The notes under the pieces are model-generated. The model had not been told where the DNA came from. It saw only the letters and a list, made by a program, of their open reading frames with translations, and ran no database searches. A stretch of 64,000 nucleotides of DNA from Octopus bimaculoides. Lineage: Eukaryota. Both the position numbers and the translations under genes were made by a program. Location: assembly GCF_001194135.2 (NCBI RefSeq), contig NC_068985.1, positions 30,728,209-30,792,208 on the forward strand, read 5' to 3'. Below are positions 2,647 to 64,000 of this stretch, one piece after another (the first letter of the stretch is position 1; each line of letters begins with the position of its first letter).

Positions 2647-3100
2647 TACAGGGTGCAGTGAATAAACTGTCGTCTAAACTACGCAAAAACAAAATTAACA
2701 CTGACATCTCATCTTAACAGATATATTTACCAAAATTACATAAAAATATCTTGTAATACTAAAGAATAAATTTATTCAGTAAAATCGCAATTGGCTTCAA
2801 CCACAGCCCCCAGACGACTTCGGAATCTCCAACTCTTTTGGACGATCTCCTTGTTTAAGTAGGTGAATGCTACCATAATCCTTGCCTTCGGTTCATCTCT
2901 CGTGTTACAAGGAGTTTTGTTGGTCTCTCGCTCAACTGCGTCCCACACATAATAATCAAGGGAGTTGCAACCTGGGGAGTTAAGTGGCCAGATGTTAGGG
3001 GTGATGTGGTCGCAGAAATTGTCTGACAGCCATGACTGGATTCTTCTGCTTGTGTAGCATGGTGCAGATTCCTGTTGACAGCCACCCTGTTGACCCAAGG
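2647..3100 (-). mobile_element. Tc1/mariner-superfamily (maT-like) transposase 3' fragment with one TIR
   Basis: QQESAPCYTS...WPLNSPGCNSLDYYVW catalytic-end motif; TIR TACAGGGTGCAGTGAATAAACTGTC at 2647; second copy at 54371. Confidence 0.85.
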
Positions 3101-3149
3101 TAGTGATAAATGATTTACAATCAAGACGGGTTTGTTTGTTTTTTTTTCA

Positions 3150-4233
3150 GTTTCCTTACAATAACTTATTTAAATCAGCTTGTCCTTCTTGTCAGTATGC
3201 TTCGCATCAAAATGACACTTCAAGCGTGAAGGTTTCATTGCTTCGTTGATCAATGCTTGATGACAAAAAAGGCACATTGGTAACTGACAGTTCTGAGGAG
3301 AGGGAATAAATCCAAACGATAAATAATCACTGCTGTATTGTCGACAAATTTTCTTGACTGGACGCATCAGTAAAGTGAAAATGTGAAAACGAATTTCTAC
3401 AGACGGCGTCAGAAAGACAGTATGGTATTCCCAAAGAGAAGAGGAAGTCGATAGAGCAGAATCAGACGACACGTCTTTACTGGAGCAAATTCGGATCTAG
3501 TTCGTTTGGCTGCCAGCATTTCAAAAATTAAGGTTTAAAATTTGGCACTTTGATATACCTTTCCAAGCTAAATTGCTGGAGTCATTCAACTTTTTCCAGA
3601 AAAATCTTTTTAAAAAGCTTTAGCGGTTTAAAATTTGATCATTTTCACCCAGTCAAGAAACACGATTTCAAAGCTGTCGTTCGTACGTGACTGCACATTT
3701 TGTCAACATCCTGAAAATAGCCCTTGTGTTTCGATATGAAACCGTAGAATTACGCATGACATATAAACCCCCTCATAACTTTTTTATATTTTTCGGAATT
3801 TTCAGAAAAGTTTTGCGAATTTGTATTCTACAAGCGGGACTTCATACGATTATTCCCAAATAAAAAATTGTGGTCAAGCGTGATTTAAGGCCTTGGCTTA
3901 TTTGGTTGCTATTTTTAGCACATATGACAACCATCTCAATGATTGTGCGATAAAATATTCGATCGATAAACCAAGTCCGCTTTTTTAATACAAAGGGACG
4001 TCTCATGCCAGTGGTCAAATCGATAAAAAAGCATTCTTATTCTAGACATGCCTCGGTATAAGTAAATGCAGACTTAATTTCTAAAAATTCTTTGTTCACA
4101 CCGCCCACCAAAATCTTAGATCACCCACCATTTTCTGGAAATTCACCCATCGCCCACCTGTAAGTTGAAATCGCCCAGTTGTAAGTTGAAATCGTCCACC
4201 GGTGCGTGATATCGCCCACTTTGGGAAGCTATG
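3150..4233 (-). mobile_element. hAT (Buster/Charlie-like) 5' remnant: terminal repeat plus BED zinc-finger N-terminus, interrupted by an unclassified repeat (about 3480-4090)
   Basis: RQYSSDYLSFGF...PMCLFCHQAL.NEAMKPSRLKCHFDAKH (3170-3400); hAT-like end CATAGCTTCCCAAAGTGGGCGAT on the minus strand at 4211-4233 with subterminal CGCCCAC repeats. Confidence 0.75.
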
Positions 4234-20329: not shown

Positions 20330-20965
20330 AGGAAAACTAACTTAGCCATGTCATGGATCGATTGACGTAAGACATACGATATGATCCCACATTCTTGGAT
20401 TATGGAATGTATGAATCTATTTGGTATTGCATTGAATGCTGAGCGATTGCTTGGAAAAAGTACGGCGAATTGGAGGACAGAACTGACAGTATATGGAACA
20501 AGTTTAGGGACAATAGAATTCAGTAGAGGCATCTTTCAAGGGGACAGCCTGTCCCCACTGATCTTTGTACTGTGCATGATACCACTAACTCTGATTTTGA
20601 GGAAAGCAAAGGCTGGGTATGTATTCAAATGCCGCCAACAAACAGTCTGCCACTTGTTATTCATGGATGACCTCAAACTTTAGTGTAAAGATGAATCCCA
20701 AGTCAGTTCCCTCGTTGATACGGTATATACTTTCAGTACTGATATCAGAATTTAGTTCGGACTGAAAAAGTGTGGTGTGTTAGTCTTGAAGAGAGGCAAA
20801 ATTAAATGTATGGACGTACTAGCAATACAGTCGGGGGAGGTTATGAAGCGAATAGAAGAGACGGGTTATAAGTACTTGGGGATATTGGAAATGGATAAAT
20901 TGATGGAGAAAGAAATGACAGAAAACTTTAAGGTGCAGTACTTGTGAAGACTAAGACTGATCCTT
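20330..20965 (+). mobile_element. R4/Dong-like reverse transcriptase core fragment
   Basis: YDMIPHSWI...RGIFQGDSLSPLIF...HLLFMDDLKL, then FGLKKC and YKYLGI. Confidence 0.92.
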
Positions 20966-28468: not shown

Positions 28469-28591
28469 ATGGCTGATGAACAAAATCAAAATGCAGATCA
28501 AAAGCCGCGAAGACGAAAGAAGGCTAAGAAGCAAAGAATTATATCTTCCACCGGAACCACCATCTTTATGATAATAAATGTTTTCCTGGTT
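28469..28591 (+). CDS. Tetraspanin coding exon 1 (N-terminal tail and start of TM1): MADEQNQNADQKPRRRKKAKKQRIISSTGTTIFMIINVFLV
   Basis: Acceptor ttttacAG at 28446-47, in-frame TGA at 28457-59 upstream of ATG 28469, 41 codons, donor GTAAGT at 28592 (phase 0). Joins in frame to the 30506 exon to form a hydrophobic TM1. Confidence 0.85.
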
Positions 28592-28659
28592 GTAAGTAAT
28601 AGTAAAACCTTTGAAAGAGATTTCAGACATCTTATGTTTCAGTTTTTAGATCACTTTAG

Positions 28660-28720
28660 ATTGTTGCAGTTGTTGTTGTCAATTGTGGTGGTGGTGGTGG
28701 TGGTTGGTGGTGGTTGTTTT

Positions 28721-28754
<34 letters not shown>

Positions 28755-28845
28755 TGGTGGTGGTGGTGGTGCTGCTGCTGCTGCTGCTGCTGCTTGTGGT
28801 GCTGGTGGTTATAATGATTATGATGATAAAGATGATAATGATGAC
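28660..28845. repeat. Compound (GTT)/(GGT)/(GCT)/(GAT) trinucleotide repeat in intron 1
   Basis: Direct reading; source of the poly-V/L tail of ORF 28460-28915. Confidence 0.9.
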
Positions 28846-30505: not shown

Positions 30506-30760
30506 ATAATTGGTGGTACATTGATCCTGGGTGGAATCATTGTCAAATATGGCTCAGCCAAAATGGAAGTACAGTTACAACCACTTTACAAAACAATGGC
30601 AGAGGCAATATCTGAAGCAGACATGCCAGATTTTGGCAGATATGTTGATATCACACATAAGGTGGCATTGGGATTCATTGTAACTGGAGCATGTCTTCTC
30701 TTCATTGCACTGATAGGTTGTTGTGGTGGTTGTTGCCAAAATAGGTCATTACTCATTCTG
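30506..30760 (+). CDS. Tetraspanin coding exon 2 (TM1 end, small extracellular loop, TM2, GCCGGCC loop)
   Basis: tacAG acceptor at 30504-05, 255 nt, GTGAGT donor at 30761. IIGGTLILGGIIVKY...GFIVTGACLLFIALIGCCGGCCQNRSLLIL matches the tetraspanin TM2/GCCG signature. Confidence 0.92.
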
Positions 30761-31294: not shown

Positions 31295-31369
31295 TATGGA
31301 TTTTTGTTAACATGTGTGATGGTCACAGAAACTGGTTTTGTTATATTGCTGTTTTCGGCTAAGAAAGAA
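31295..31369 (+). CDS. Tetraspanin coding exon 3 (TM3): YGFLLTCVMVTETGFVILLFSAKKE
   Basis: ttgcAG acceptor, 75 nt phase 0-0, GTGAGT donor at 31370. Hydrophobic helix with the polar Glu typical of tetraspanin TM3. Not in the ORF track. Confidence 0.88.
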
Positions 31370-34200: not shown

Positions 34201-34308
34201 ATGAAAGACTCTATGAAAGAACCAATGATTACCAATCTGAAAAACATGTATGCTGGTCCTGAAAAAGAAGATGTAACTTCATATGGTTGGAATTTTGTTA
34301 TGTCTACG
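34201..34308 (+). CDS. Tetraspanin coding exon 4 (large extracellular loop helices A/B): MKDSMKEPMITNLKNMYAGPEKEDVTSYGWNFVMST
   Basis: Strong ttttcttttAG acceptor ending 34200, 108 nt, GTATGC donor at 34309. W-x-x-V/M pattern immediately precedes the CCG exon. Confidence 0.87.
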
Positions 34309-35635: not shown

Positions 35636-35848
35636 TTCCAGTGTTGTGGGATCAATAACTACACAGAATTTCATTATGCCAAAAAATGGGACCGGAGAAC
35701 TAAAATTAGGGGCATGCAATACTTGAAAATAATTCCTGATACCTGCTGTTCTCGCAGGGTTGATATTTTAAGTGAAAAACAGTTCAAAGAAATGACTGAC
35801 ACAAACTGTACTATTAATCCGACTCTTACAAATTCATATATTGGAAAG
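35636..35848 (+). CDS. Tetraspanin coding exon 5 (large loop with CCG and PxxCC motifs)
   Basis: ttcttgcAG acceptor, 213 nt, GTAAAT donor at 35849. FQCCGINNYTEF...IPDTCCS...TNCTINPT; N-glycosylation sequons NYT and NCT. Confidence 0.95.
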
Positions 35849-38971: not shown

Positions 38972-39055
38972 AGTTGTTGGGGTACAATACAGGCTTTATT
39001 AAACGAACAGAGTGGACTGATGATGGGAATTGGTGTAACAGTGCTAGGATTTGAG
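38972..39055 (+). CDS. Tetraspanin coding exon 6 (last loop Cys and first half of TM4): SCWGTIQALLNEQSGLMMGIGVTVLGFE
   Basis: tttgtttcAG acceptor, 84 nt, GTAAGT donor at 39056 (phase 0). GIG...E is typical of TM4. Confidence 0.92.
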
Positions 39056-42720: not shown

Positions 42721-45624
42721 TCTTTAATGAAATATATATATACATATATGTACANNNNNNNNNNNNNNNNNNNNNNNNNNNNNNNNNNNNNNNNNNNNNN
42801 NNNNNNNNNNNNNNNNNNNNNNNNNNNNNNNNNNNNNNNNNNNNNNNNNNNNNNNNNNNNNNNNNNNNNNNNNNNNNNNNNNNNNNNNNNNNNNNNNNNN
42901 NNNNNNNNNNNNNNNNNNNNNNNNNNNNNNNNNNNNNNNNNNNNNNNNNNNNNNNNNNNNNNNNNNNNNNNNNNNNNNNNNNNNNNNNNNNNNNNNNNNN
43001 NNNNNNNNNNNNNNNNNNNNNNNNNNNNNNNNNNNNNNNNNNNNNNNNNNNNNNNNNNNNNNNNNNNNNNNNNNNNNNNNNNNNNNNNNNNNNNNNNNNN
43101 NNNNNNNNNNNNNNNNNNNNNNNNNNNNNNNNNNNNNNNNNNNNNNNNNNNNNNNNNNNNNNATATATATATATATATATAACAGTTTGTTTTTATATAT
43201 AGTTACACATAAAAAAAAGTGGTTTGGGATATTGATGGATCAATTTGTTCAGTAACTAAATATAGCACTGGATTATATTTTGTGCATGACACATGGGACC
43301 TAAGTTTTGGATTTATAGGTGTTTCTTTTCGTTATTAGCTGAAACTATTTAAGCATATATGTAAACTGAGGTGAGAAAGACTTTATATCTGAATGTAAAC
43401 ACAGATGAAAGTGAAGTTTTAAAATGTCATATTAAACAGAATATAAATTCAATCATATATTATACCAGGAATTATTCAATTGAGTAAACTCCTTTCCTGA
43501 AAATGTATTTCCTTTGTAATAATGTTAGAAATTATTATAACACCTCACTCATAACTCTTAAATCCCCCAGTTCTATCAGCACAATGGGCTATGAGCCTTC
43601 TCCAAACATCCCAATTTCTCACTTTTCTCAATTCTACTTAGGCAGGCTCCCATCTTTATCATGTCATCCTGGAACGTACTGCGCCATGTCTTCCTTGGTC
43701 TTCCAGTCTCTTATTTTCCTCCTACTGGAATGTAGTCATTTATACATTTATCAGTAAACATACATTCACTTTATCCATCAACAGTCATACACTCTCAATC
43801 AAAGATGTTCATTTTCAAAACACTTACACACACATCACATGTATTTATATGAATGTCTTTCTCTTTTGCTTGTAGTTGGAAAATACATTCAATGCATTCA
43901 AAAAGTTTATATTAAAGTAACAGGCACAGTCATATTCAAACATACTCGCACATTGATTTTGTTTAACACTCACACATAAGTTTTGATAAATATGTCCTTC
44001 AAACAGACTCATTCAATCTAACTATCCTTATATTTTCATTAAAAATATTCAATAAATTTCTTTTTAACCAAAGTGTGCATGAGTATGCAGCTGATAAAAA
44101 TTAAACCAACAACATTAGCCACACCCTTCATAAATAAAAGATTATCTCTGGGGCGTAAATGATGCATAGTAAGTAATACAAAATGTCTTACCATTTAATC
44201 TGCAATAACAGGCTTAAATCCTGACCAGCTTAACACAATCCAGCTGTTTAAAATGTATTCCCACTTGTAAAAGTCACCTTCAACCATCATTTAAAGTTTA
44301 AAAATACCATATATCATTAGTTTAGTGACTGAATGAGTTGATATCTGATTTTATTCAAATGACTAAAACAGAATGAGTATAAATTCCAACTAGAACAAGT
44401 GCAACTTTTCACAATTGTAATAAAAAGTACATAGTATTTTATTGGTTTCAGCCACTGAGAATATGTATAACCATTCTGATAATAAATTCTTTTATTAATG
44501 TAAAGTAGCAAATATGAGATAACTACAAAATAATAGAAAAATTAAAATGTTTCACAAATCACATGGATCCATACGTATGGCTTGTTATAAAGTCCAGTTT
44601 TTTTAATATAATATTAACTAGATAAGAAACAATTTTTACTTGTGGATAAAATTTTCATCACAGGTAAATTTTCTCAGAAGGAAAAGGGCTACTGTGTGTT
44701 CCAAACATGCCAAAGTAATCACTGCTGCATAACTTTCATGAAACTGCCAATGAAACTGCTGGAGGGAGTCATAGTATCAGTAGGTACTGATATTATTGTG
44801 ATCTCTTTACGATAGCTACTGTTGTGCAAGTTACTTGGACTACATGCATATATAAATATACATGTATACATACTTACATGCATATATACATACAAGCATA
44901 CATATATATATATATATTATTTATATTTTATATATATATACATATATATTTATTGTGTGTGTGAAACATCTCAGGAAATCTGCATCAAACACATGGGAAA
45001 ATAATTACTTAATATTAGAACACATTTTGTTTCTGCAAACAAAACTCACAACTTGTTTCATCAGCTTTGACAAACAAGACAGTAGTAATTCCATAATACT
45101 ATTTCATGAGTACCATGAAGCTTTTGATTGGCTACTGTTCTAAATGAATCAAGATATGAATCAGCGGAAAGGAACAAAAAAATCTCTTCATATTTATATA
45201 TATATTTATATATTTGTGTGTGAGTTTGTTTATTTGCATGTGTGTGCACATGTAGATATATATATGTGTGTACTTGGGTGTTATGAATGTAGTATGTATG
45301 AATGTATGAATGTATGTATGTATGTATGTATGGATGGATGGATGGATGGATGGATGGATGGATGGATGTTTGAGTGTGTGTGTATGTATGTATGAGTATA
45401 AGCAAAGGCAGAGCTGCTGTTTGTATGATTTTTGACAAAATTATTAGCTAGATTCATGACAAAAAATATAGAACCAAATCAGAGATAGAAACCATCTGAG
45501 GACTCACGATGAGAATGCCATCAAACCTGTTATACTTATGTCTGCAATGAGAGAGTGGTTATTTGTGATATCAAGTTGATGATCACCATATGTACAAATG
45601 TGCATATGTATATATGCATGCATG

Positions 45625-50000: not shown

Positions 50001-50157
50001 CAGCCAAACAGAATCAGCCTAGCTGGTGTGTTGGTGTTTTGCAGACATATAGGTTGCACCCTCCCTTCACTAATAATGCCTGGCCGATCATGTATATGTG
50101 TCAAACCCCATGTAGTAATGTATTATCAGTTCCTAATTACAGTAAGTTCTCACATTA

Positions 50158-50204
50158 ACACACACACACACACACACACACAAAAACACACATCACTTAC
50201 ACAT

Positions 50205-50297
<93 letters not shown>
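50158..50297. repeat. (CA)n microsatellite
   Basis: Direct reading; about 200 bp upstream of candidate exon 7A. Confidence 0.95.
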
Positions 50298-50301
<4 letters not shown>

Positions 50302-50492: not shown

Positions 50493-50601
50493 ATTCTTGT
50501 CTTTGTTATATCACTTATAGAAGCCAATGCAGGTACATTCACCAAAGAAAAAAAGGCTTTAAAATGCCGGAGAGGATCCTGGAACTCTTTGAAAAAATAT
50601 G
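50493..50601 (+). CDS. Candidate tetraspanin exon 7A (completes TM4; cytoplasmic tail): ILVFVISLIEANAGTFTKEKKALKCRRGSWNSLKKY+G
   Basis: Long T-rich tract then tttaAG at 50491-92; open frame gives GFE|ILVFVISLI; strong donor G|GTATGT at 50602 (phase 1). Confidence 0.65.
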
Positions 50602-51229
50602 GTATGTGGCTCAAAATGTTGCCAATGTACTATCATTTATATTTAAAAAATGAAAAGAAAAACATTTAATTTTTGAACAATAACCTCCAAACTCTGACTA
50701 ATCATGAAGAGGTAAAACTTAATATCAAAGAATTCCAATAATAAAACTATGATTGGCCAACTCCAACTGAAAGAAATATTAACTGGAGTCATTTTGTCAT
50801 GGATAACATTAAGTGCGTTAACTTGACTCAATAGATTTTTTTTTCTTCTGAATAATTCTACCTAATTGAAGAATTACACATAGAAATTTAGCCTGAGAAG
50901 TAAGAACAGAGCCAATAACCTTTCCAGTTCTTCCTAAAATAGAGAATAGGATAATGAGCCATTATGGTTAATGTTTGGGGGGGGGGACAAGGGTGTGTTG
51001 AGTTTCCCAAGGATGCAGTCCAAAATAGAATGACTTGGAAATACATACTGTGAGAGAAGTGGGAAAAGAGAAAGAGAGAGGTAGTATGAGCTGCAGACAA
51101 ATAAGATGATGACCTGTGATATACACTCACAAGTTCAAAGGAGAAGATACATTTATAGTAGAGGGCACAACTCAATAACTCACAAGTGGTTGAAATATAC
51201 TGGTAGACATAGTAATGCATGAGTGACAT

Positions 51230-51600
51230 TACTACCAGAAGTTGTACTGTAAATCAGTGATTTAAAATACCTCCTTTGGTCATGATTGACCATGGGATTG
51301 CACCTAGAAAGTTCCCCTACAAGGCACAAATTTGGGCAAGGTTGTTTATGGAAAACCAGCAATTGCCCATGCATACTGGCCTTCTCCATGCTACCAATGT
51401 TATCCAAGGGAAAGGGAAAGGCCAATACAGTTTGGCACCAGTGGTGTTGCAACTCATTTCTACAGATGAGTGAATTGGAGCAACATGAAATAAAGTGTCT
51501 TGCTCAAGACTACAGCATAAAGTTTAGTCCAGGAACCAAACTCACTACCTCATGATTGTGAGCCTGATGCTCTAACCACTGAGCCACACACCTTCACATA
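51230..51600 (-). mobile_element. tRNA-derived SINE (third family), antisense
   Basis: Reverse complement of 51461-51600 matches the head of the 52763 copy. Confidence 0.7.
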
Positions 51601-51708
51601 AATCAGTGGTTTAACTTTAAATAGCTGTGATGTACAATGTTCATAGAAGAGAAATGACAGAGTTAAATTACTTTCAGTGTATTATTAATATTTATTTATT
51701 TGTTTTAG

Positions 51709-51746
51709 CTTTGCATGGATGGAAAACAAAGTTGAAACAAATATAG
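51709..51746 (+). CDS. Candidate terminal exon 8A after exon 7A: (A)LHGWKTKLKQI*
   Basis: tttgttttAG acceptor at 51707-08; phase-1 join gives GCT then 11 codons to TAG; AATAAA at 52212-17. Short, so chance is possible. Confidence 0.4.
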
Positions 51747-52728
51747 AGAGAGACTGAACTAGTTGCAGTCAATGTCATATTTTACTGAATCAAGATCATG
51801 TCTATGACTCTTAACATGTAAATAACATTGGCTTTTAACTTTTGCACAAAGCCACAATTATTGGGGTGAGCACAATCAATTAAAGTGGCTCCTATACTTC
51901 TTTATTGTTTCTGGATGGATGGAAAACAAAGCTGACACCAGCAAGTTTTGAATTCAGAACATAAAGTGATGTTAGTAACTACCACAAGGCATTTCGTCTG
52001 GTATTCTATTAATTTTACCCTTAGCATGATAATAATATTGAATCCTAATATTGACACAAAGCAAAACATTTGTGGGTAGAGGAGAGCATTGTCAATTGAA
52101 TGGTATTTATTTGATGCAACCAAGCTGGAATTCAGCAGAAAACAAAGAAGTATTGTTGGACACCTATGGTATGCTAATAATATTGTATTATTGATAAGTG
52201 TATTATATAACAATAAAATTTCTGATTGAACTATACCTTCATAATGTATACAGTTGTAGAGTATAGTTATATACAGTTCAAGAGATACTGGGGATTTATT
52301 TTATTTTTATATTTATCAAATTTATACCTTGAAATAAGTCATCATTAAAATTTTATTTTAAGGAACTCTTCGTCTTTTTGAATGGATATGATTTTCTGAT
52401 TATAAATTTAACATTGCAATCTTCCCAAATACAGTCTCTTATTTCACACATGCTATTAGATGTTTGGCCATTTCAAAACTCAAGCTAAATAATCAGGAAG
52501 AAATAAATCCATATCACATGCTCACTTGCTAATGGTTGCCCATTGAATCCAATAATGACCATCTCCTTCATTTCTGAATCCTTTGATAACTAGTTAGATC
52601 ATACATACATGCATACATACATATGTACCCATGTATGTATACAAACATGTATCTATGTATGCATACATACATATGTATCTATGTATGTATAAGCATATAT
52701 ATGTATGTATATGTATGTATGTATGTAA

Positions 52729-52762
<34 letters not shown>

Positions 52763-52765
<3 letters not shown>

Positions 52766-53090
52766 GTGAAGGCACATGGCTTAGTGGGTAGGGCATTTGG
52801 CTCACAATCATAAGGTCATGAGTTCAACTATCGGCGACACATTGTGTCCTTGAGCAAGACACTTTATTTCACATTTCTCCAGTCCACTCAGCTGGCAAAA
52901 GTGAGTAGCACCTGTGTTTCAAAGGGTCAACCTTGTCACACTCTGTGTCATGCTGAATCTCCCTGAGAACTACATTAAGGGTACATGTGTCTGTGGAGTG
53001 CTCAGCCACTTGCATGTTAATTTCACAAGCAAGCTGTTCCATTGATTGTATTAGCTGGGACCCTCGTTGTCGTAGCCGACTGAGTGCTCC
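52763..53090 (+). mobile_element. tRNA-derived SINE (third family)
   Basis: TGGCTTAGTGG box A, box B-like GAGTTCAA, and conserved body. Confidence 0.8.
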
Positions 53091-54106
53091 TTTTTATATA
53101 TATATATATATATATNNNNNNNNNNNNNNNNNNNNNNNNNNNNNNNNNNNNNNNNNNNNNNNNNNNNNNNNNNNNNNNNNNNNNNNNNNNNNNNNNNNNN
53201 NNNNNNNNNNNNNNNNNNNNNNNNNNNNNNNNNNNNNNNNNNNNNNNNNNNNNNNNNNNNNNNNNNNNNNNNNNNNNNNNNNNNNNNNNNNNNNNNNNNN
53301 NNNNNNNNNNNNNNNNNNNNNNNNNNNNNNNNNNNNNNNNNNNNNNNNNNNNNNNNNNNNNNNNNNNNNNNNNNNNNNNNNNNNNNNNNNNNNNNNNNNN
53401 NNNNNNNNNNNNNNNNNNNNNNNNNNNNNNNNNNNNNNNNNNNNNNNNNNNNNNNNNNNNNNNNNNNNNNNNNNNNNNNNNNNNNNNNNNNNNNNNNNNN
53501 NNNNNNNNNNNNNNNNNNNNNNNNNNNNNNNNNNNNNNNNNNNNNNNNNNNNNNNNNNNNNNNNNNNNNNNNNNNNNNNNNNNNNNNNNNNNNNNNNNNN
53601 NNNNNNNNNNNNNNNNNNNNNNNNNNNNNNNNNNNNNNNNNNNNNNNNNNNNNNNNNNNNNNNNNNNNNNNNNNNNNNNNNNNNNNNNNNNNNNNNNNNN
53701 NNNNNNNNNNNNNNNNNNNNNNNNNNNNNNNNNNNNNNNNNNNNNNNNNNNNNNNNNNNNNNNNNNNNNNNNNNNNNNNNNNNNNNNNNNNNNNNNNNNN
53801 NNNNNNNNNNNNNNNNNNNNNNNNNNNNNNNNNNNNNNNNNNNNNNNNNNNNNNNNNNNNNNNNNNNNNNNNNNNNNNNNNNNNNNNNNNNNNNNNNNNN
53901 NNNNNNNNNNNNNNNNNNNNNNNNNNNNNNNNNNNNNNNNNNNNNNNNNNNNNNNNNNNNNNNNNNNNNNNNNNNNNNNNNNNNNNNNNNNNNNNNNNNN
54001 NNNNNNNNNNNNNNNNNNNNNNNNNNNNNNNNNNNNNNNNNNNNNNNNNNNNNNNNNNNNNNNNNNNNNNNNNNNNNNNNNNNNNNNNNNNNNNNNNNNN
54101 NNNNNN

Positions 54107-54153
<47 letters not shown>

Positions 54154-54370
54154 GGGGTACTGAAAGGTTCCTGGCTTTAAAGGTATTATGAAAGGCCTGG
54201 CTGGAGGCCCAACCTTCCAAGTTATTTTACAAGGCTTAGAAAAACTGAAGGACCACTGCAATAAGTGTATGAATCTGAGAGAGGAATATGTTGAATAAAA
54301 TCATAAATAACTGATCCTCCTGTATTTTCTTTTACCCACAGTCAAGTACCTCTCAGCACCCATTGTATAA

Positions 54371-54888
54371 TACAGGGTGCAGTGAATAAACTGTCATCTA
54401 AATCACACAAAAATGAAAATAACACTGACATCTCATTTTAACAGATATATTTACCAAAATTACATAAAAATATCTTGAAATACTTAAGAGTAAATTTATT
54501 CAATAAAATCGCCATTGGGTTCAACCACAGTCTCCAGACGACTTCAGAATCTCCTGCAACTCTTCTGGATGGTCTTCTTGTTTAAGTTGGTGAATGCTGC
54601 CATAATCCTTGACTTCAGTTCATCTTTGGTGTTACAAGAAGTTTTGTTGGTCTGTCACTCAACTGCGCCCCGCACATAATAATCAAGGGGGTTGCAGTCT
54701 GGGGAGTTAGGTGGCCAGATGTTAGGGGTGATGTGGTCGCAGAAATTGTCTGACAGCCATGACTGAGTTCTCCTGCTTGTGTGGCATGGTGCAGAGTCCT
54801 GTTGTCAGACACAGGGTCTTCCAGCAGCCACCCTCTTGAGCCAAGGCAGCACTACCTCCTCTAAGCACTTAATGTAGGCCTCCTTGTT
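54371..54888 (-). mobile_element. maT-like Tc1/mariner 3' fragment with TIR, second copy
   Basis: YIKCLEEVVLPW...QQDSAPCHTS...WPPNSPDCNPLDYYV; same TIR as at 2647; runs into a gap. Confidence 0.88.
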
Positions 54889-57800
54889 NNNNNNNNNNNN
54901 NNNNNNNNNNNNNNNNNNNNNNNNNNNNNNNNNNNNNNNNNNNNNNNNNNNNNNNNNNNNNNNNNNNNNNNNNNNNNNNNNNNNNNNNNNNNNNNNNNNN
55001 NNNNNNNNNNNNNNNNNNNNNNNNNNNNNNNNNNNNNNNNNNNNNNNNNNNNNNNNNNNNNNNNNNNNNNNNNNNNNNNNNNNNNNNNNNNNNNNNNNNN
55101 NNNNNNNNNNNNNNNNNNNNNNNNNNNNNNNNNNNNNNNNNNNNNNNNNNNNNNNNNNNNNNNNNNNNNNNNNNNNNNNNNNNNNNNNNNNNNNNNNNNN
55201 NNNNNNNNNNNNNNNNNNNNNNNNNNNNNNNNNNNNNNNNNNNNNNNNNNNNNNNNNNNNNNNNNNNNNNNNNNNNNNNNNNNNNNNNNNNNNNNNNNNN
55301 NNNNNNNNNNNNNNNNNNNNNNNNNNNNNNNNNNNNNNNNNNNNNNNNNNNNNNNNNNNNNNNNNNNNNNNNNNNNNNNNNNNNNNNNNNNNNNNNNNNN
55401 NNNNNNNNNNNNNNNNNNNNNNNNNNNNNNNNNNNNNNNNNNNNNNNNNNNNNNNNNNNNNNNNNNNNNNNNNNNNNNNNNNNNNNNNNNNNNNNNNNNN
55501 NNNNNNNNNNNNNNNNNNNNNNNNNNNNNNNNNNNNNNNNNNNNNNNNNNNNNATATATATGAGACCAGAAGCCATGCAAAAATGTATGTTGTTACAAGT
55601 ACATTGTTTATTGCCATAAAAAGATATAGCAAAAATCCCTTATTGTGCCTCAAATAGACATTAGTTCCATGAATCTGCTCATTATTGTGCTATGATATGA
55701 AATTTTTCTGTCAAACTTAAATTACAATTTTAAACATTTACTACAGCTGTTTTCAAATTACTGAGAACTAGCTTGAGACCACAGTACAGCAGTAACCTTA
55801 AGCACTTACTATATATAGTCTGATTATATAATACAAATGAAGGCACTCATTTGCCAAAACTCTATAAGCTAAATCTGGGAATGCACTTTCAATGTAACCA
55901 AAGGAATAAGCATAAAGATATTTTTTAAAAACTACCATTGGCATCAACACTTAAGAAGATCAAGCATTGGAAAAATTTAATTGCCAATGGCATTGTGACC
56001 AAGCATTCATCATCATTAAAAATGTTCTTTCAGTACTAAATACTTTGATTCTTTTATTGTGCTTGTAGCTCTTTAGTTCTTTGAACTAACACTTTCAGCT
56101 GTATGGGTGTGTGAATATGCATGTGTAACAATATTTGGAAATGCACATGTACATGTGTGTGAGGGAAACTAATACTTGACACAGCACTTGAAGTAATGAA
56201 CTGATTAATGATATATAAGTAATTATTCCTAGCCTTGCTCAAAAATAATGTTGGGATTATAAAAATATGGGGCCTGCAACTGAGAGATTGAAACTTGATC
56301 TAGCTGGGTCTCAGCTTCAGTTCTATCATAACCATGCATTCTTTTTCTACTTTGGTTTTGGTACAACTGGAATATTCAATTTCATTCAGTTTTTCAGTGG
56401 AGAGGATTTACATAATATAAAAATGAGTGTAACTCTCTTTTCTTTTGGGGAAATTTTGAATTGGTAAAACAAATATGTTTTCATAAAGTACAAACAGCAT
56501 GGAAAATTCTGAAAATGAAATTCAAGCAACTGAAATTAAATAAAATTATTTAAAAATGTATCTAAATTTATTAATATAAATTGAACTAAGCTACTAATAA
56601 AAATAAAAAAATTAATAATAAAACTTCAAATCCAATTTCAGTTTGTAAAATTTTTCATTCAATTCTGCATTTGTGAAAACATCTATAATTTATTAAGTTG
56701 GAATCTTAACTTGAGAAATTTACTTTAAAAAAAGATGAATTAAATAATAATACTCATCTCAGGTTTCTACATCCAACATAAGTTGTTTGATAAACATTTC
56801 TGTTCTAAAGATTATTATTTTAATCCTTCATTTATCCTAGTTCTATTTCAGAAATAATGTTTGTTCCTTTAAAAGCAATTATGATTGTATTTGACTACAG
56901 TCTGCACCAGAATAATTTAAAACTAAATCATTAAAACTTTGAACCTTATTATTATTTTACTTCTGCTTATTTTCATTTTATTTTTATGTTTTATTGTTGT
57001 TTATTATCTTAGAAAATGCAAACCTATGTAGCTGTTTACCATATGACAGCTTTAATGTGCCGCAAGGGATGGCACTTGAGTAGCTTTCAGTTTTATTTTC
57101 TGGTAGACTTAAAATCTAAGATTTCCAAATACTATGTAAATGTAAATGAAATGAAAATATCTTCACCCTAGAATTGAAATCAGGCCACAGTTTTGGTTAG
57201 TGGAATGCTTAGTCAATCCGTGGTATGCACGCAATTTGCATTTAGAAAAGATATTACTTTATCTGTTTGCATATTGTTTTTATTGGTGGGATGCTGAAAT
57301 CTAAATGCATATCTATGTAGAGTACAATAAGGATGACCAAGTGATTAAGAAGTTCATTTCACAATAACGAGGTCTTGGGTTTGATTAGAATGCAAAGATG
57401 GACACAATGCCACTGAACATTTTGTCAAGCATGCTAACTATTCTGCCAGCTCGCCACTTTTTCCATTCTGAGAATTTTAACATACAGTTATAAGCTCATA
57501 TCTTATTGCAAGCCTATATGTTGCTTCTGAACATTCTCATTATGAGGGTCCTTCACCATCCTCATCATTGCCACGATTAAACATCCCTTTCCCACACTGG
57601 TATAAGCTGGATGGTTCAACAGAAGCTGGTGAGCCAGTGACTATGCCAAGTCTTAATGTCTGTATTGGCATGGTTTTTATGGCAATGTGTCCTTTGTAAT
57701 GCCAACCATTTTTCAGTGTGTGTTGGGTGCCTTTTATGCAGCATTGGCATCCATGAAGTCACCAAGTAACTTGTAAGACGTCTCTACTGAGTGGGGGAGT

Positions 57801-58479
57801 AGTATTGAGGGAGATGACTTTATGCCAGGTGATGAGAGATTGAAGTATGATAGGGGGACAGAAACAGGTGTCATGCTGTTGGAAGAAGAAAAAAGAGGAG
57901 AGAAAAAGATGGTGGGGGAGATGTGTCAGGACATACACTCAAGGGAGGAGAATGTAAATGAAGTGGTAGATTTGCATGAGCATGTGCATGCATGTGTGCA
58001 TGCATGTGTGTGTTGCACATATGCATATGTGTGTCATGCATGTGTGAGTGGTGTGCACATGCATCTATGTGTGTGCATGCACATGCATTTGTGTGTGTGT
58101 GTGTGTCTCCATAGACTTTATGAATTTCTTTCAACCAAGCAAATGTGTCTCTATTATGGTAAAATTTTGCTGACCCTGTTTGACCATATGTTGTCATAGC
58201 TGAGCTCTTTCTTTTCAACATGTGCAACCTGCAAATTTGTCATGTTTGCAAATTCTTGAGCTGAGAATGATCAGTAAAATTATCAAACTGAAGATACACA
58301 GTTAAGAGAATGACTTTCCATTAAAAAAAGAACCTAATGATGGGTATTTTTTCTATTTAGAATTTTAAAATATTGTGCTGGTCTATACACATTCAGTGAA
58401 CTTGAAAATTACTTTTGAGATCATACAAGCTATTGTACTTAATTACAAGTGAAAATCATGATTAATTTAAAAGAATATA

Positions 58480-59480
58480 TAAAGGTCTGTCCAAAACAAC
58501 CCAATCGTCTTATAAAACAAAACAAAATTCTTGCCTTTCTCACAGTTTAATCAGATTTTTCTTCAAAATAGTTCCCTTCACTGCTCCCAATATACTTTGT
58601 AGTTTTGAATTGCCTCCTGGAATGCATTTTCAGGGGTAGTGTACAGTTCTCATATCAAATAAAGATTATCCTTTCAGGACAGATCTCTCAACTTTTGGAA
58701 CAAAAATGTCTGCAGGGGTCAAATCTATAGAACATAGTTGTTGGGCACAAGGGACATTAAAGTTATAGATAAGAACTGACACATAAGCAGGTACACAGCC
58801 ATTGTACAGCATTCAGGTTTTGTCATACATTCTCTCTCAGACACTTCATGGCATCCAAGTAAAGCTCTTCATTGATCATCTGATCACATGAAACAAACTC
58901 ATGGTGAATAACACCCTTCCACATTTGAGCAGCTCCAGCATGTATTTTTATAGATGTGGAAATGCTATTTTAATTCACTGTGGCAAATACCTTTTTATTT
59001 TGATGTCAAAACTGTACACCCGCATTTCCTCAGCCATTATAACACTTTTTAGAAAGTTTTCTTTGACATTCAGACAATCAAACAGCTTTTGACCCACTGT
59101 GACTTGGTTCAATTTCTGTTCATAACTTTTGCTACAACTTAATGCATCTTCAATTTATCTTTCAAAATAAGGTGGCACAAACTTTTACAGATGTCTCTAC
59201 CTTTGAAAACTTCAAAGACAATGAAACAATGATTTTCATGGATTGTATTATTTACTCATAGTAGGTGATAATTTTCTGTTGTCATGAAAGTTCATCCAAG
59301 TTTTGGATTGTCTTGCAAAGATGTTCTTCCCTATTTGGAAAGCTGCTTCCACAAATCTCAAACAATTCTGTTATAGGCTTATTGCAACATTAGAAAAGTC
59401 TCTATAATAATCTTTATCCCAAATTAAAGCTGAATTTCCCATAAATATGTTGCTCTTCCAAATCGCTCATTGTTCAAGTA
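58480..59480 (-). mobile_element. Heavily decayed mariner transposase
   Basis: GRTSLQDNP, EQKLNQV...FLKSVIMAEEMRVYSFD (resembling ITGDETWVY), PENAFQEA; many stops and frameshifts. Confidence 0.7.
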
Positions 59481-60732
59481 CATTAAAATAAATTCACTTT
59501 AGTACATGTAAATCAATGACTATTATTAGATTGAAAGTCAAGGTCACCTATGTAGAACATTTCACACTCTAACAGCTTATCGGTATGCTGTTTTAAATGT
59601 CTATTTTCTTTTCAAATAGACCACATATGTATGAAATGTTTATGAAAAATATCAAAGGCTTCCTTATTATTACAAGTGTTACAGTTGTGTTATAGCCTGT
59701 GGATATTTTGAAATAGATACAAAGGAAACACATTGAAAGAAACATTTGATCAACTTTTATAGTCATGACCATCATATCATTATTATGAGACATTTTGTTT
59801 TACACGATTCACTTTTAAAGGTAATATATTGTTAAATGATGGGGAAGGGACAGCAACATCAAGTGACTATGTAGAAACATCTTCAGTAGTTCCTGCTCCT
59901 TTTTTTTTTTTTGTTAATTTTTTTCTTGTTTTCAATTTAGATGACTGATTAAATATATTATACAATAGAAATTGAATAACCAGTTTTTCTATTCTAGGAA
60001 ATAGTTCATTGATAGCTTTTAGTTTTTTGTTGCAGTTATTAACTTCAGTGTTGTCTCTGATAAAATGATAACCAAGCAATTCCTAATTTTAGTCAATACA
60101 GAGTTCAAATGGTTATTGTTTCTATACTTTTTGATTAGTTTTATAGAAGAAAAAATATTCATCTCTTTTTCCACATTATGTAAAACAAAAATAATGCATA
60201 ATATATAAACCATTTGTGGTATATGCTGCAAAAAAATTATTTTCATTCATGCATAATTTCCACACATTTAATAACTTTGGCATACATGCACTATCAATTT
60301 TGGACTTTAATATATGTTCTTTAAATTTAACAGCTTTAATCAGTGTTTTATTAACTGGTATAACAGACCATAATAAAACCTAATGTCTGTTTCTTTGTGA
60401 CATAAAGCTATTTGCCTTAAAGAATGGTTCTAATTCAGTAATACTATCCAAATTTATAACAATTTCCCACTTAAATTATTTTTATAATAGAATAAATATT
60501 TTAGCATAATTAAAAAATCTAAATCTACATAGGTGTGTACTCTTAATTTTGGTTTTAAATTAAATAATTTCAAAATTGTTTTAAAGTGTACTAAACTGTA
60601 TTTACAGAAATAACATATTAAAATTACTTTTAAATTGACTGTTTTGTAAATGTTTTTAATGGTTTCATTTTGTAAAATGTTTTGTTGAAATTTTACAAGA
60701 CAGAATTTTTTTCATTGTTTTTATTATAACAG

Positions 60733-60821
60733 GTTCTGATGGCTGCGGTAAATATTTACCTGTGCAGAGGTATCCGAAAGGGAGCAAGAAAGTAAATCAT
60801 GGTTTGGAGACTCTGTTGTGA
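60733..60821 (+). CDS. Candidate terminal tetraspanin exon, open in two frames: phase 0 VLMAAVNIYLCRGIRKGARK* (stop 60793-95); phase 1 (G)SDGCGKYLPVQRYPKGSKKVNHGLETLL* (stop 60819-21)
   Basis: Polypyrimidine tract and aacAG acceptor at 60731-32 in non-repetitive sequence. The phase-0 peptide resembles canonical tetraspanin ends (LCxxIRK). AATAAA at 61887 and 61945. Confidence 0.65.
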
Positions 60822-63484: not shown

Positions 63485-64000
63485 TATCAGGTCATTAAGA
63501 ATGAAATGTCCAATTTTTTTAAGCATCAAGTTTGACAGTCATTAACTCTAATGTTTTACATTTCAAAAGTTGGTGTCTGATTATATTGTGAGTTTTCTCT
63601 TGTAAATCAATTTTTGTGAACCTATGGACAGATCAAAAATTCTGTATTCTTTATGAATATGAGTTCCGTCATGGAATCAATGCATCTCAGACAGCTCAAA
63701 ACATCAATGAGGTATTTGGTGAAGATGTAGCAAATGAATACACTGTACATGGATGGTTTGAGAAGTTCCAGTCTGGTGACTTTACTCTTGAAAATCAGCC
63801 CCGTGGTAGACCTGAGTCTAAAGTAGAAAATGATGAGCTGGAAACTGTAGTGGAAGTGGATACATCTCAAACTACACATGAGTTAGTAGCAAGGTTTGAT
63901 GTTTCGATTCCAACTGTATTGGACCATCTGAAACAAATTGGCAAGGTAAAGAAGCTGGACAAGTGGGTACCACATGAACTGAACGAGCATCAAATGACGT
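63485..64000 (+). mobile_element. Mariner (Hsmar1/Mos1-like) element 5' half, truncated by the window end
   Basis: TIR-like TATCAGGTC... at 63485; ATG 63624 MDRSK, a +1 frameshift near 63640, then an open frame LYEYEFRHG...WFEKFQSGDFTLENQPRGRP...KWVPHELNEHQ to the window end. Confidence 0.92.

What the first reader, a model, noticed from the sequence alone, without database searches (positions are those of the whole stretch)
50493..60821. Tetraspanin TM4/C-tail appears to be chosen among alternative exons, with one terminal exon usable in two reading frames
Exon 6 ends mid-TM4 (...GIGVTVLGFE, phase 0). Joining it directly to the exon at 60733 gives VLMAAVNIYLCRGIRKGARK* (306 aa), a canonical-looking end with a juxtamembrane Cys and basic residues. 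Joining it to the 109-nt exon at 50493 also completes TM4 (ILVFVISLI) but shifts the phase. The same 60733 exon is then open in a second frame, GSDGCGKYLPVQRYPKGSKKVNHGLETLL* (351 aa), ending in a class I PDZ-ligand-like E-T-L-L. A third option uses 51709-51746 (334 aa). Inclusion of one frameshifting exon could therefore swap half of TM4 and the whole cytoplasmic tail. The sequences and splice signals are seen directly; real usage is inference.
Basis: partly seen in the sequence, partly recalled or inferred. Interest (0 to 1): 0.72.

Follow-up and report, generated by a model that had tools for sequence, protein, structure and literature searches.

The report
Octopus tetraspanin alternative frameshifting tail exon
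An octopus tetraspanin gene has an optional 109-base exon that replaces the end of the fourth membrane helix and shifts the last exon into a second reading frame; public annotation already lists both forms, the extra exon is conserved in the paper nautilus Argonauta, and the mechanism is a common, well-described one.

Summary
The window is Octopus bimaculoides chromosome CM046605.1. From it I rebuilt an 8-exon tetraspanin gene.

- **Skipping the exon:** leaving out 50493-50601 gives the 306-aa protein.
- **Including the exon:** this gives the 351-aa protein, which reads exon 60733-60821 in the +1 frame and ends in ETLL.
- **Already annotated:** both proteins match RefSeq models X2 and X1 exactly in O. 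bimaculoides, and O. sinensis has the same set. It uses an internal acceptor at 50521.
- **N gaps:** the gaps are intronic. The gapless O. sinensis and O. vulgaris loci show no conserved exon at those places.
- **New here:** the 109-nt exon is unannotated in Argonauta hians but conserved there (88% identity, no indel, both splice sites kept, flanks unalignable). The +1 frame is open and ends in the same GLETLL. Substitutions favour the X1 frame: 11 of 19 are synonymous (p = 0.001), and 5 of 6 terminal-exon changes fall on its third codon positions.
- **Not tested:** no transcript data were reachable, and PDZ binding is inference.

Frameshifting penultimate exons that make the last exon dual-coding are widespread. 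This is a real but ordinary case of a known kind.

The parts
28469..28591 (+). Exon 1 (ATG at 28469; N-terminal tail and start of TM1), phase 0 donor gtaagt
   Evidence: the concatenated exons translate exactly to P0005 and P0004
30506..30760 (+). Exon 2 (TM1 end, small loop, TM2)
   Evidence: conserved block with Argonauta
31295..31369 (+). Exon 3 (TM3, 75 nt)
34201..34308 (+). Exon 4 (start of the large extracellular loop)
35636..35848 (+). Exon 5 (large extracellular loop with the CCG motif)
   Evidence: C190 C191 G192 are invariant in the family alignment
38972..39055 (+). Exon 6 (end of the large loop and proximal half of TM4, ends ...GFE, phase 0)
50493..50601 (+). Alternative 109-nt cassette exon (7a). 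Encodes ILVFVISLI, an alternative distal half of TM4, plus 27 tail residues. Shifts the frame by +1. Acceptor is a weak aag|, donor is ATG|gtatgt.
   Evidence: Present in RefSeq X1 of two Octopus species. 88% identical without indels in Argonauta, with both splice sites kept and unalignable flanks. 7 synonymous and 6 non-synonymous changes in frame 0; the other + strand frames contain stops.
50521..50562 (+). Coding part specific to RefSeq isoform X3. Internal acceptor tatag|AAGCC at 50521, other frame, KPMQVHSPKKKRL, stop at 50560-50562 (39 nt before the exon's donor). TM4 is truncated.
   Evidence: All 3 changes against Argonauta in this stretch are non-synonymous in this frame. Pfam coverage stops at profile position 208 of 225.
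60733..60795 (+). Terminal exon, part read in two frames. Frame 0 gives VLMAAVNIYLCRGIRKGARK* (X2). The +1 frame gives (G)SDGCGKYLPVQRYPKGSKK... (X1).
   Evidence: Only 3 of 63 nt differ in Argonauta, against 15.5% in exons 2-6 (Fisher p = 0.016).
60796..60821 (+). 3'UTR in X2 but coding in X1: ...VNHGLETLL, stop TGA at 60819-60821.
   Evidence: All 3 changes against Argonauta are at X1 third codon positions. GLETLL is kept despite GAG>GAA and CTG>CTA.
51709..51746 (+). Judged not to be a real exon.
   Evidence: Not in any RefSeq isoform. Not found in Argonauta. O. sinensis and O. vulgaris read VLHR* here.

Best explanation
This is an octopod tetraspanin gene, named 'CD63 antigen-like' or 'tetraspanin-9-like' by automated annotation. 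It has a conserved, protein-coding alternative cassette exon of 109 nt between the exon that ends in mid-TM4 and the last exon.

**Exon skipped (X2, 306 aa).** The last exon completes TM4 (VLMAAVNIY) and gives the family-typical short tail LCRGIRKGARK.

**Exon included (X1, 351 aa).** The cassette supplies a different but equally tetraspanin-like distal TM4 (ILVFVISLI). Because 109 is not a multiple of 3, the last exon is then read in the +1 frame, past the X2 stop and 26 nt into what is 3'UTR in X2. The result is a tail of about 56 residues, predicted to be disordered, that ends in ETLL. Both stops lie in the last exon, so neither mRNA should be a target of nonsense-mediated decay.

**Shown:**
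- the gene structure and the frames;
- identity of the two proteins to the RefSeq models;
- conservation of the exon, its splice sites, the +1 frame and the C-terminus in Argonauta, with a substitution pattern that fits purifying selection on the X1 frame.

**Inferred:**
- both forms are made in vivo in regulated proportions;
- the long tail changes partners or trafficking, most plausibly through the C-terminal class-I-PDZ-type motif E-T-L-L, or through the YLPV (YxxΦ-type) motif also present in the tail;
- the TM4 swap alters intramembrane contacts.

X3 (299 aa) is probably a by-product of a competing acceptor.
For: **Gene and isoforms**
- The window at 25469-63821 is identical to O. bimaculoides CM046605.1.
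- Exons taken from the window translate exactly to XP_052824214.1 (X1), XP_014768386.1 (X2) and XP_052824215.1 (X3).
- O. sinensis has the same three isoform models.

**Conservation of the cassette exon**
- Against Argonauta it is 88% identical over all 109 nt with no indel. AG|...|GTATGTGGCT is kept, and the flanks are unalignable microsatellite.
- After exon 6, the only colinear blocks conserved between Octopus and Argonauta are a non-coding block at about 44.1 kb, this exon and the terminal exon.
- Among Octopus species the exon is 99.1% identical, against 87-88% for its flanking intron.

**Substitution pattern (O. bimaculoides against Argonauta)**
- Cassette exon, frame 0: 7 synonymous and 6 non-synonymous changes (pS 0.275, pN 0.073). 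The other two + strand frames contain stops.
- Terminal exon, +1 frame: 4 synonymous and 2 non-synonymous. 5 of the 6 changes are at X1 third codon positions, against 1 of 6 for the X2 frame.
- Combined excess of synonymous changes in X1-specific coding: 11 of 19, binomial p = 0.001.

**Protein features**
- The Pfam tetraspanin profile aligns through residue 295 of X1.
- ILVFVISLI scores 11.6 bits against the TM4 columns of 133 relatives, against 3.5 bits for VLMAAVNIY.
- The AlphaFold model has one helix from 260 to 313, with pLDDT 93 and 87 for residues 281-300, and a low-confidence tail.
Against: - No transcript or junction data could be reached. No RNA-derived contig encodes X1, X2 or X3, and a search with the alternative tail found nothing.
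- Usage and abundance therefore rest on automated RefSeq models. Their RNA-seq support is what the NCBI pipeline normally requires, but I did not inspect it.
- Substitution counts are small (13 and 6 changes), from essentially one informative comparison, Octopus against Argonauta.
- In the 63-nt overlap, constraint from the X2 frame confounds the test.
- The Argonauta annotation lists only the canonical form.
- No relative outside octopods aligns to the alternative tail, so the exon's age beyond Octopoda is unknown.
- PDZ binding of ETLL is inferred from the motif alone.
Confidence: 0.75

Rival explanations
1. Splicing noise or annotation artefact. The 109-nt exon is occasionally included by error, and the 351-aa protein is a by-product with no function. 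RefSeq lists it only because a few reads span the junctions.
For: No transcript abundance was seen here. No RNA-derived contig carries X1. An open +1 frame of this length occurs in 22% of random intronic windows. The acceptor (aag|) is weak. Argonauta is annotated with the canonical form only.
Against: The exon, both splice sites, its frame, the +1 frame and the C-terminal GLETLL are kept in Argonauta while the surrounding intron is unalignable. Substitutions are biased to synonymous sites of the X1 frame (p = 0.001). Models exist independently in two Octopus species.
Confidence: 0.1
2. Conserved regulatory exon. The exon is conserved because including it lowers output of the canonical tetraspanin, or because the RNA carries a regulatory element. 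The encoded tail itself does not matter.
For: Synonymous divergence in the exon (pS 0.275) is lower than in exons 2-6 (pS 0.518). This points to extra constraint at the RNA level, as is usual for alternative exons. X3, made from the same exon, truncates TM4.
Against: Inclusion creates no premature stop: the X1 stop lies in the last exon. The X3 stop is only 39 nt before the last junction, inside the usual 50-55-nt tolerance (established rule, not tested in cephalopods). Changes concentrate at X1 third codon positions and keep the amino acids. The exon encodes a family-typical TM4 segment.
Confidence: 0.1
3. The pieces belong to another gene, or further exons are hidden in the assembly gaps. 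In that case the joins 50601>60733 and 39055>60733 would be false.
For: Two N gaps lie between the 109-nt exon and the terminal exon, and three more lie between exon 6 and the 109-nt exon.
Against: The gapless O. sinensis and O. vulgaris loci are colinear across the gaps that flank the finding, and the same exons there translate to the same tails. No other block conserved with Argonauta lies in those intervals. The minus-strand frames across both exons are either broken by stops or change amino acid at most of the substitutions.
Confidence: 0.03

Closest known systems
Frameshift-inducing alternative splicing of penultimate exons that extends the reading frame into the 3'UTR (Preussner et al. 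2020, PMC7392665); alternatively spliced dual-coding regions (Tress et al. 2026 preprint, doi 10.64898/2026.05.28.727796; PMC13247117)
   Same: A penultimate cassette exon whose length is not a multiple of 3. The last exon is read in two frames. The alternative frame runs past the canonical stop into the 3'UTR. Both stops lie in the last exon. The new tail is predicted to be disordered and carries short linear motifs. Both frames are kept across species.
   Different: Those surveys cover human and mouse, or vertebrates. This case is in a cephalopod and in a tetraspanin. The extension into the 3'UTR is short (26 nt), and the tail is not proline-rich. The cassette exon also replaces part of a transmembrane helix, not only a soluble tail.
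Plasma-membrane Ca2+-ATPase (PMCA) C-terminal 'a' and 'b' splice variants
   Same: [quoted passage not shown] That the PMCA switch works through a frame change is from my own knowledge of Strehler and Zacharias 2001, not checked here.
   Different: In PMCA the PDZ motif belongs to the form without the insert. Here the PDZ-type end belongs to the form with the insert. PMCA binding to PDZ proteins has been shown by experiment; here it is inferred. No transmembrane segment is exchanged in PMCA.
KAI1/CD82 splice variant lacking exon 7
   Same: A tetraspanin in which alternative splicing alters TM4. Exon 7 encodes 28 residues that span the distal large loop and the proximal part of TM4, and losing it changes partner interactions (PMC5814219).
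   Different: CD82 exon 7 is skipped in frame and removes sequence. The octopus exon is added, shifts the frame, and substitutes an intact distal TM4 plus a new tail.
Tetraspanin C-termini as PDZ ligands (CD63 with syntenin-1)
   Same: The short cytoplasmic C-terminus of a tetraspanin binds a PDZ domain and directs trafficking (PMC6747541). RefSeq names the octopus gene 'CD63 antigen-like'.
   Different: The CD63 ligand is listed there as class III and is constitutive. The octopus ETLL fits class I and is specific to one isoform. The octopus protein is only about 31% identical to its nearest non-octopod relatives, so orthology to CD63 is not established.

Membership tests
Tetraspanin (Pfam PF00335) | Profile match above the curated cut-off across four transmembrane segments | tested here: met
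   X1 scores 100.3 bits, X2 101.9 and X3 97.0, against a cut-off of 32.1. Coverage is profile positions 4-221, 4-224 and 4-208 of 225. The AlphaFold model has four long helices and pTM 0.71.
Tetraspanin (Pfam PF00335) | CCG motif and further conserved cysteines in the large extracellular loop | tested here: met
   C190, C191, G192, C224 and C260 are invariant in an alignment of 60 relatives. FQCCG is encoded in exon 5.
Dual-coding terminal exon through a frameshifting penultimate cassette exon | Cassette exon length is not a multiple of 3, and both stop codons lie in the last exon | tested here: met
   109 nt. Stops at 60793-60795 (X2) and 60819-60821 (X1).
Dual-coding terminal exon through a frameshifting penultimate cassette exon | Both splice paths are present in transcripts | not testable with these tools
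   Only RefSeq isoform models in two species are available. No RNA-derived contigs were found and the alternative-tail search was empty.
Dual-coding terminal exon through a frameshifting penultimate cassette exon | Evolutionary constraint on both frames | tested here: inconclusive
   X1 frame: 4 synonymous and 2 non-synonymous changes, with 5 of 6 at third positions. X2 frame: the 20-aa tail keeps 18 of 20 residues and the family motif LCRxIRK. Overlap divergence is 4.8% against 15.5% elsewhere (p = 0.016). Only 6 substitutions from one deep comparison.
Class I PDZ-binding C-terminus (X-[S/T]-X-hydrophobic-COOH) | The motif sits at the extreme C-terminus | tested here: met
   X1 ends E-T-L-L in O. 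bimaculoides, O. sinensis, O. vulgaris and Argonauta.
Class I PDZ-binding C-terminus (X-[S/T]-X-hydrophobic-COOH) | Binding to a PDZ domain | not testable with these tools
   No binding data. The tail is modelled at low confidence and is probably disordered, which fits a linear motif.
Poison (NMD-inducing) cassette exon | Inclusion places a stop more than about 50-55 nt upstream of the last exon junction | tested here: not met
   The X1 stop is in the last exon. The X3 stop is 39 nt upstream of the junction.
Mutually exclusive duplicated exons | The two exons are homologous, of like length and phase, and never joined to each other | tested here: not met
   X1 joins the two exons. Their lengths and phases differ. 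BLASTP finds no alignment between the two encoded peptides.

The most novel reading that the evidence does not exclude
The dual-coding arrangement could be an old octopod, or possibly cephalopod-wide, innovation in which the +1 frame of the last exon is at least as constrained as the canonical frame. One regulated splice choice would then do two things at once. It would exchange the distal half of TM4, next to the conserved TM4 glutamate, and it would add a long tail with an isoform-specific PDZ-type end. The same extracellular tetraspanin would thereby move between different membrane scaffolds, for example synaptic or junctional ones. I know of no tetraspanin with such a TM4-and-tail switch, and the paper searches found none.
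Probability: 0.25. Interest if true: 0.5.

Novelty: new member of a known kind. Interest (0 to 1): 0.3.

Why it matters
Tetraspanins organise membrane microdomains through their transmembrane helices and short cytoplasmic tails. An isoform switch that changes both could redirect the same extracellular module to different partners. The case also adds a non-vertebrate example of a terminal exon kept open in two frames over a deep split (synonymous divergence about 0.9 in the constitutive exons). The practical gain is small. The isoforms are already in RefSeq, and the Argonauta annotation can be extended by one exon at L002 14587-14695. The mechanism class is already known to be widespread (PMC7392665; doi 10.64898/2026.05.28.727796).

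Tried and rejected
1. **Alternative-tail search.** A word-indexed protein search with the 99-aa alternative tail returned no candidates. It therefore gave no evidence either way from RNA-derived proteins.
2. **Exact look-ups.** Look-ups of X1, X2 and X3 for RNA-derived contigs returned only the genome records or nothing.
3. **Squid and cuttlefish.** The exhaustive search found no close non-octopod orthologue. The nearest full-length relative is 31% identical. Two fragments of 52-55% identity have no usable context. The age of the exon beyond Octopoda could not be tested.
Rejected: not annotated, not conserved, and a different short peptide in sister species.
5. **Duplication origin.** The idea that the 109-nt exon is a diverged copy of the terminal exon is not supported. 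The peptides show no similarity outside the shared exon-6 part.
6. **Conserved block at 44099-44291 as another exon.** Rejected: its indels are not multiples of 3 and it holds many stops. It has no Rfam match.
7. **Antisense gene.** Rejected as the cause of the conservation. The minus-strand frames over both exons have stops, or change amino acid at most substitutions.
8. **Acidic dileucine signal.** ETLL does not fit [DE]xxxL[LI] (read directly from the sequence).
Full report
**What is there.** The + strand carries a tetraspanin gene. I read the three places named in the finding. A protein search with the visible exons then returned 'CD63 antigen-like isoform X1 [Octopus sinensis]' (351 aa) and 'tetraspanin-9-like [Argonauta hians]' (318 aa). 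The Octopus cluster holds three isoform models in each of O. bimaculoides and O. sinensis: X1 of 351 aa, X2 of 306 aa and X3 of 299 aa. It also holds an O. vulgaris entry identical to O. sinensis X2. Window 25469-63821 is base-for-base identical to O. bimaculoides chromosome CM046605.1, N gaps included.

**Gene model.** An exhaustive search over AG/GT boundaries gave a single solution that translates exactly to X1:

| Exon | Coordinates | Note |
|---|---|---|
| 1 | 28469-28591 | ATG at 28469 |
| 2 | 30506-30760 | |
| 3 | 31295-31369 | |
| 4 | 34201-34308 | |
| 5 | 35636-35848 | |
| 6 | 38972-39055 | ends mid-TM4 |
| 7a | 50493-50601 | 109 nt, alternative |
| terminal | 60733-60821 | read in two frames |

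All constitutive exons are phase 0. The three isoforms arise as follows.
- **X2:** skipping the 109-nt exon gives X2 exactly, with its stop at 60793-60795.
- **X1:** including the exon shifts the terminal exon into the +1 frame, with the stop at 60819-60821.
- **X3:** an internal acceptor (tatag|AAGCC, 50521) gives X3 exactly, with its stop at 50560-50562.

X3 was missed.

**The assembly gaps.** Gaps 53116-54106 and 54889-55553 lie in the intron between the 109-nt exon and the terminal exon. The O. sinensis (L001) and O. vulgaris (L004) loci have no gaps. The flanks of both gaps map colinearly onto L001, with about 765 and 406 nt between them. After exon 6, three colinear blocks are shared by any Octopus locus and Argonauta: a non-coding block near 44.1 kb, the 109-nt exon and the terminal exon. 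In L001 the two exons translate, joined directly, to the tail of the O. sinensis X1 model. The gaps hide nothing relevant.

**Is the alternative form more than chance or noise?** The open +1 frame alone is weak evidence, because 22% of random 28-codon intronic windows from this gene have no stop. Conservation is the stronger argument.

- **Argonauta, cassette exon.** The exon sits at L002 14587-14695 and is not annotated there. It is 88% identical over all 109 nt with no indel. It has an AG acceptor and the donor GTATGTGGCT. Its flanks are unalignable dinucleotide repeats.
- **Within Octopus.** The exon is 99.1% identical among species, against 87-88% for its flanking intron.
- **Baseline.** O. 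bimaculoides against Argonauta, exons 2-6: pS = 0.518 and pN = 0.058.
- **Cassette exon, frame 0.** 7 synonymous and 6 non-synonymous changes (pS 0.275, pN 0.073). The other two frames contain stops.
- **Terminal exon.** Argonauta reads GSDGCGKYLPVQRYSKGSKKVNQGLETLL* in the +1 frame. The length and stop are the same, and the last six residues are kept despite GAG>GAA and CTG>CTA.
- **Codon positions.** Five of the six differences in this exon fall on third positions of the X1 frame, and only one on a third position of the X2 frame.
- **Combined test.** Over all X1-specific coding, 11 of 19 changes are synonymous where 23% would be expected (binomial p = 0.001). For the 109-nt exon alone p = 0.018.
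- **Overlap.** The 63-nt stretch read in both frames has 3 differences (4.8%), against 15.5% in exons 2-6 (Fisher p = 0.016). That is what double constraint would produce.
- **Caveat.** The numbers are small and come from one deep comparison. They all point the same way.

**What the exon encodes.**
- **Pfam coverage.** The tetraspanin profile aligns through residue 295 of X1 (profile position 221 of 225), through 298 of X2 (position 224), and only to 282 of X3 (position 208).
- **Fit to the family's TM4.** Against the TM4 columns of 133 relatives, ILVFVISLI scores 11.6 bits, VLMAAVNIY 3.5 bits and the X3 peptide -19 bits. The terminal exon carries the family's juxtamembrane LCRxIRK motif.
- **Structure model.** An AlphaFold model of X1 (60-sequence alignment, mean pLDDT 80.7, pTM 0.71) has one continuous helix from 260 to 313, with pLDDT 93 and 87 for residues 281-300. 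The tail after about 300 is of low confidence.
- **Tail motifs.** X1 is a complete four-helix tetraspanin with a changed distal TM4 and a tail of about 56 residues that is probably disordered. The tail ends in E-T-L-L, which fits X-[S/T]-X-hydrophobic, and it also contains YLPV. Both are read directly from the sequence. Their function is inference.
- **X3.** Its TM4 is cut short. Its three changes against Argonauta are all non-synonymous in its own frame. It is probably a by-product of a competing acceptor.

**The third option.** The 51709-51746 path is in no RefSeq isoform. It has no counterpart in Argonauta. In O. sinensis and O. vulgaris it has four substitutions in its first 20 nt and reads VLHR*. 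I reject it.

**Mechanism and comparison.** A penultimate cassette exon whose length is not a multiple of 3 puts the last exon into another frame and carries translation past the usual stop. Both stops lie in the last exon. [quoted passage not shown] Tress et al. (2026 preprint) report annotated dual-coding exons in more than a third of human genes, with 105 transcript pairs under selection in both frames.

- **PMCA.** The 'a' and 'b' variants show the same logic of an isoform-specific PDZ end (PMC9307954).
- **CD82.** Within tetraspanins, CD82 lacking exon 7 alters TM4 by an in-frame deletion (PMC5814219).
- **CD63.** Its C-terminus binds syntenin PDZ1 (PMC6747541).

The paper searches found no tetraspanin with a switch of both TM4 and tail.

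**Limits.**
- I could not see transcripts. Exact look-ups found no RNA-derived contigs, and the alternative-tail search returned nothing.
- No squid, cuttlefish or Nautilus locus was reachable.
- As far as I know, the NCBI pipeline creates alternative variants from transcript alignments. I did not inspect the support for these models.

**Verdict.** One of the three proposed paths is wrong, and one annotated path was missed. This is a real, conserved and probably functional instance of a common mechanism, and it is already in RefSeq. Interest is moderate to low.

Noticed in passing
window 44099-44291 (intron between exon 6 and the 109-nt exon); L002 11845-12045; L001 18264-18457: A block of about 200 nt, single-copy in the window, that is conserved and colinear between Octopus and Argonauta (70% identity, E about 3e-18). 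After exon 6 it is the only such non-exonic block in the gene. Its indels are not multiples of 3, it holds many stops, and it has no Rfam match. It may be an intronic regulatory element.
   Followed up: partly
L002 14587-14695 and 19027-19115 (Argonauta hians BAAFZT010000040.1): The Argonauta annotation lists only the canonical 318-aa protein. The locus nevertheless holds an intact orthologue of the 109-nt exon and an open +1 frame ending in GLETLL, so an unannotated X1-type isoform is predicted there.
   Followed up: yes
window 50493-50601 and 60733-60821: Among the three Octopus species, these two exons are the least diverged in the gene: 0.9% and 1.1% differences, against 1.3-4.2% for exons 2-6.
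   Followed up: partly
window 63592-63999 (+) and 20366-20680 (+): Fragments of transposable elements: a Mos1/mariner-type transposase HTH domain (Pfam HTH_48, E = 3e-14) and a reverse-transcriptase fragment (RVT_1, E = 3.5e-8).
   Followed up: partly
window 54618-54851 (-) and 2873-3169 (-): Two open frames encode near-identical peptides (...HHATQAxExSHGCQTISATTSPLTSGHLTPQ...), which points to one repeat family. One copy sits between the two N gaps of the finding, so repeats probably caused the gaps. Neither the 54618-54851 frame nor an overlapping frame at the other copy (2775-3146) has a Pfam match.
   Followed up: no
window 28650-28830: A long GTG/GCT trinucleotide-rich tract sits in intron 1 just after exon 1. 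Many TG/CA and TA microsatellites lie throughout the introns, including directly upstream of the 109-nt exon at 50150-50300.
   Followed up: no
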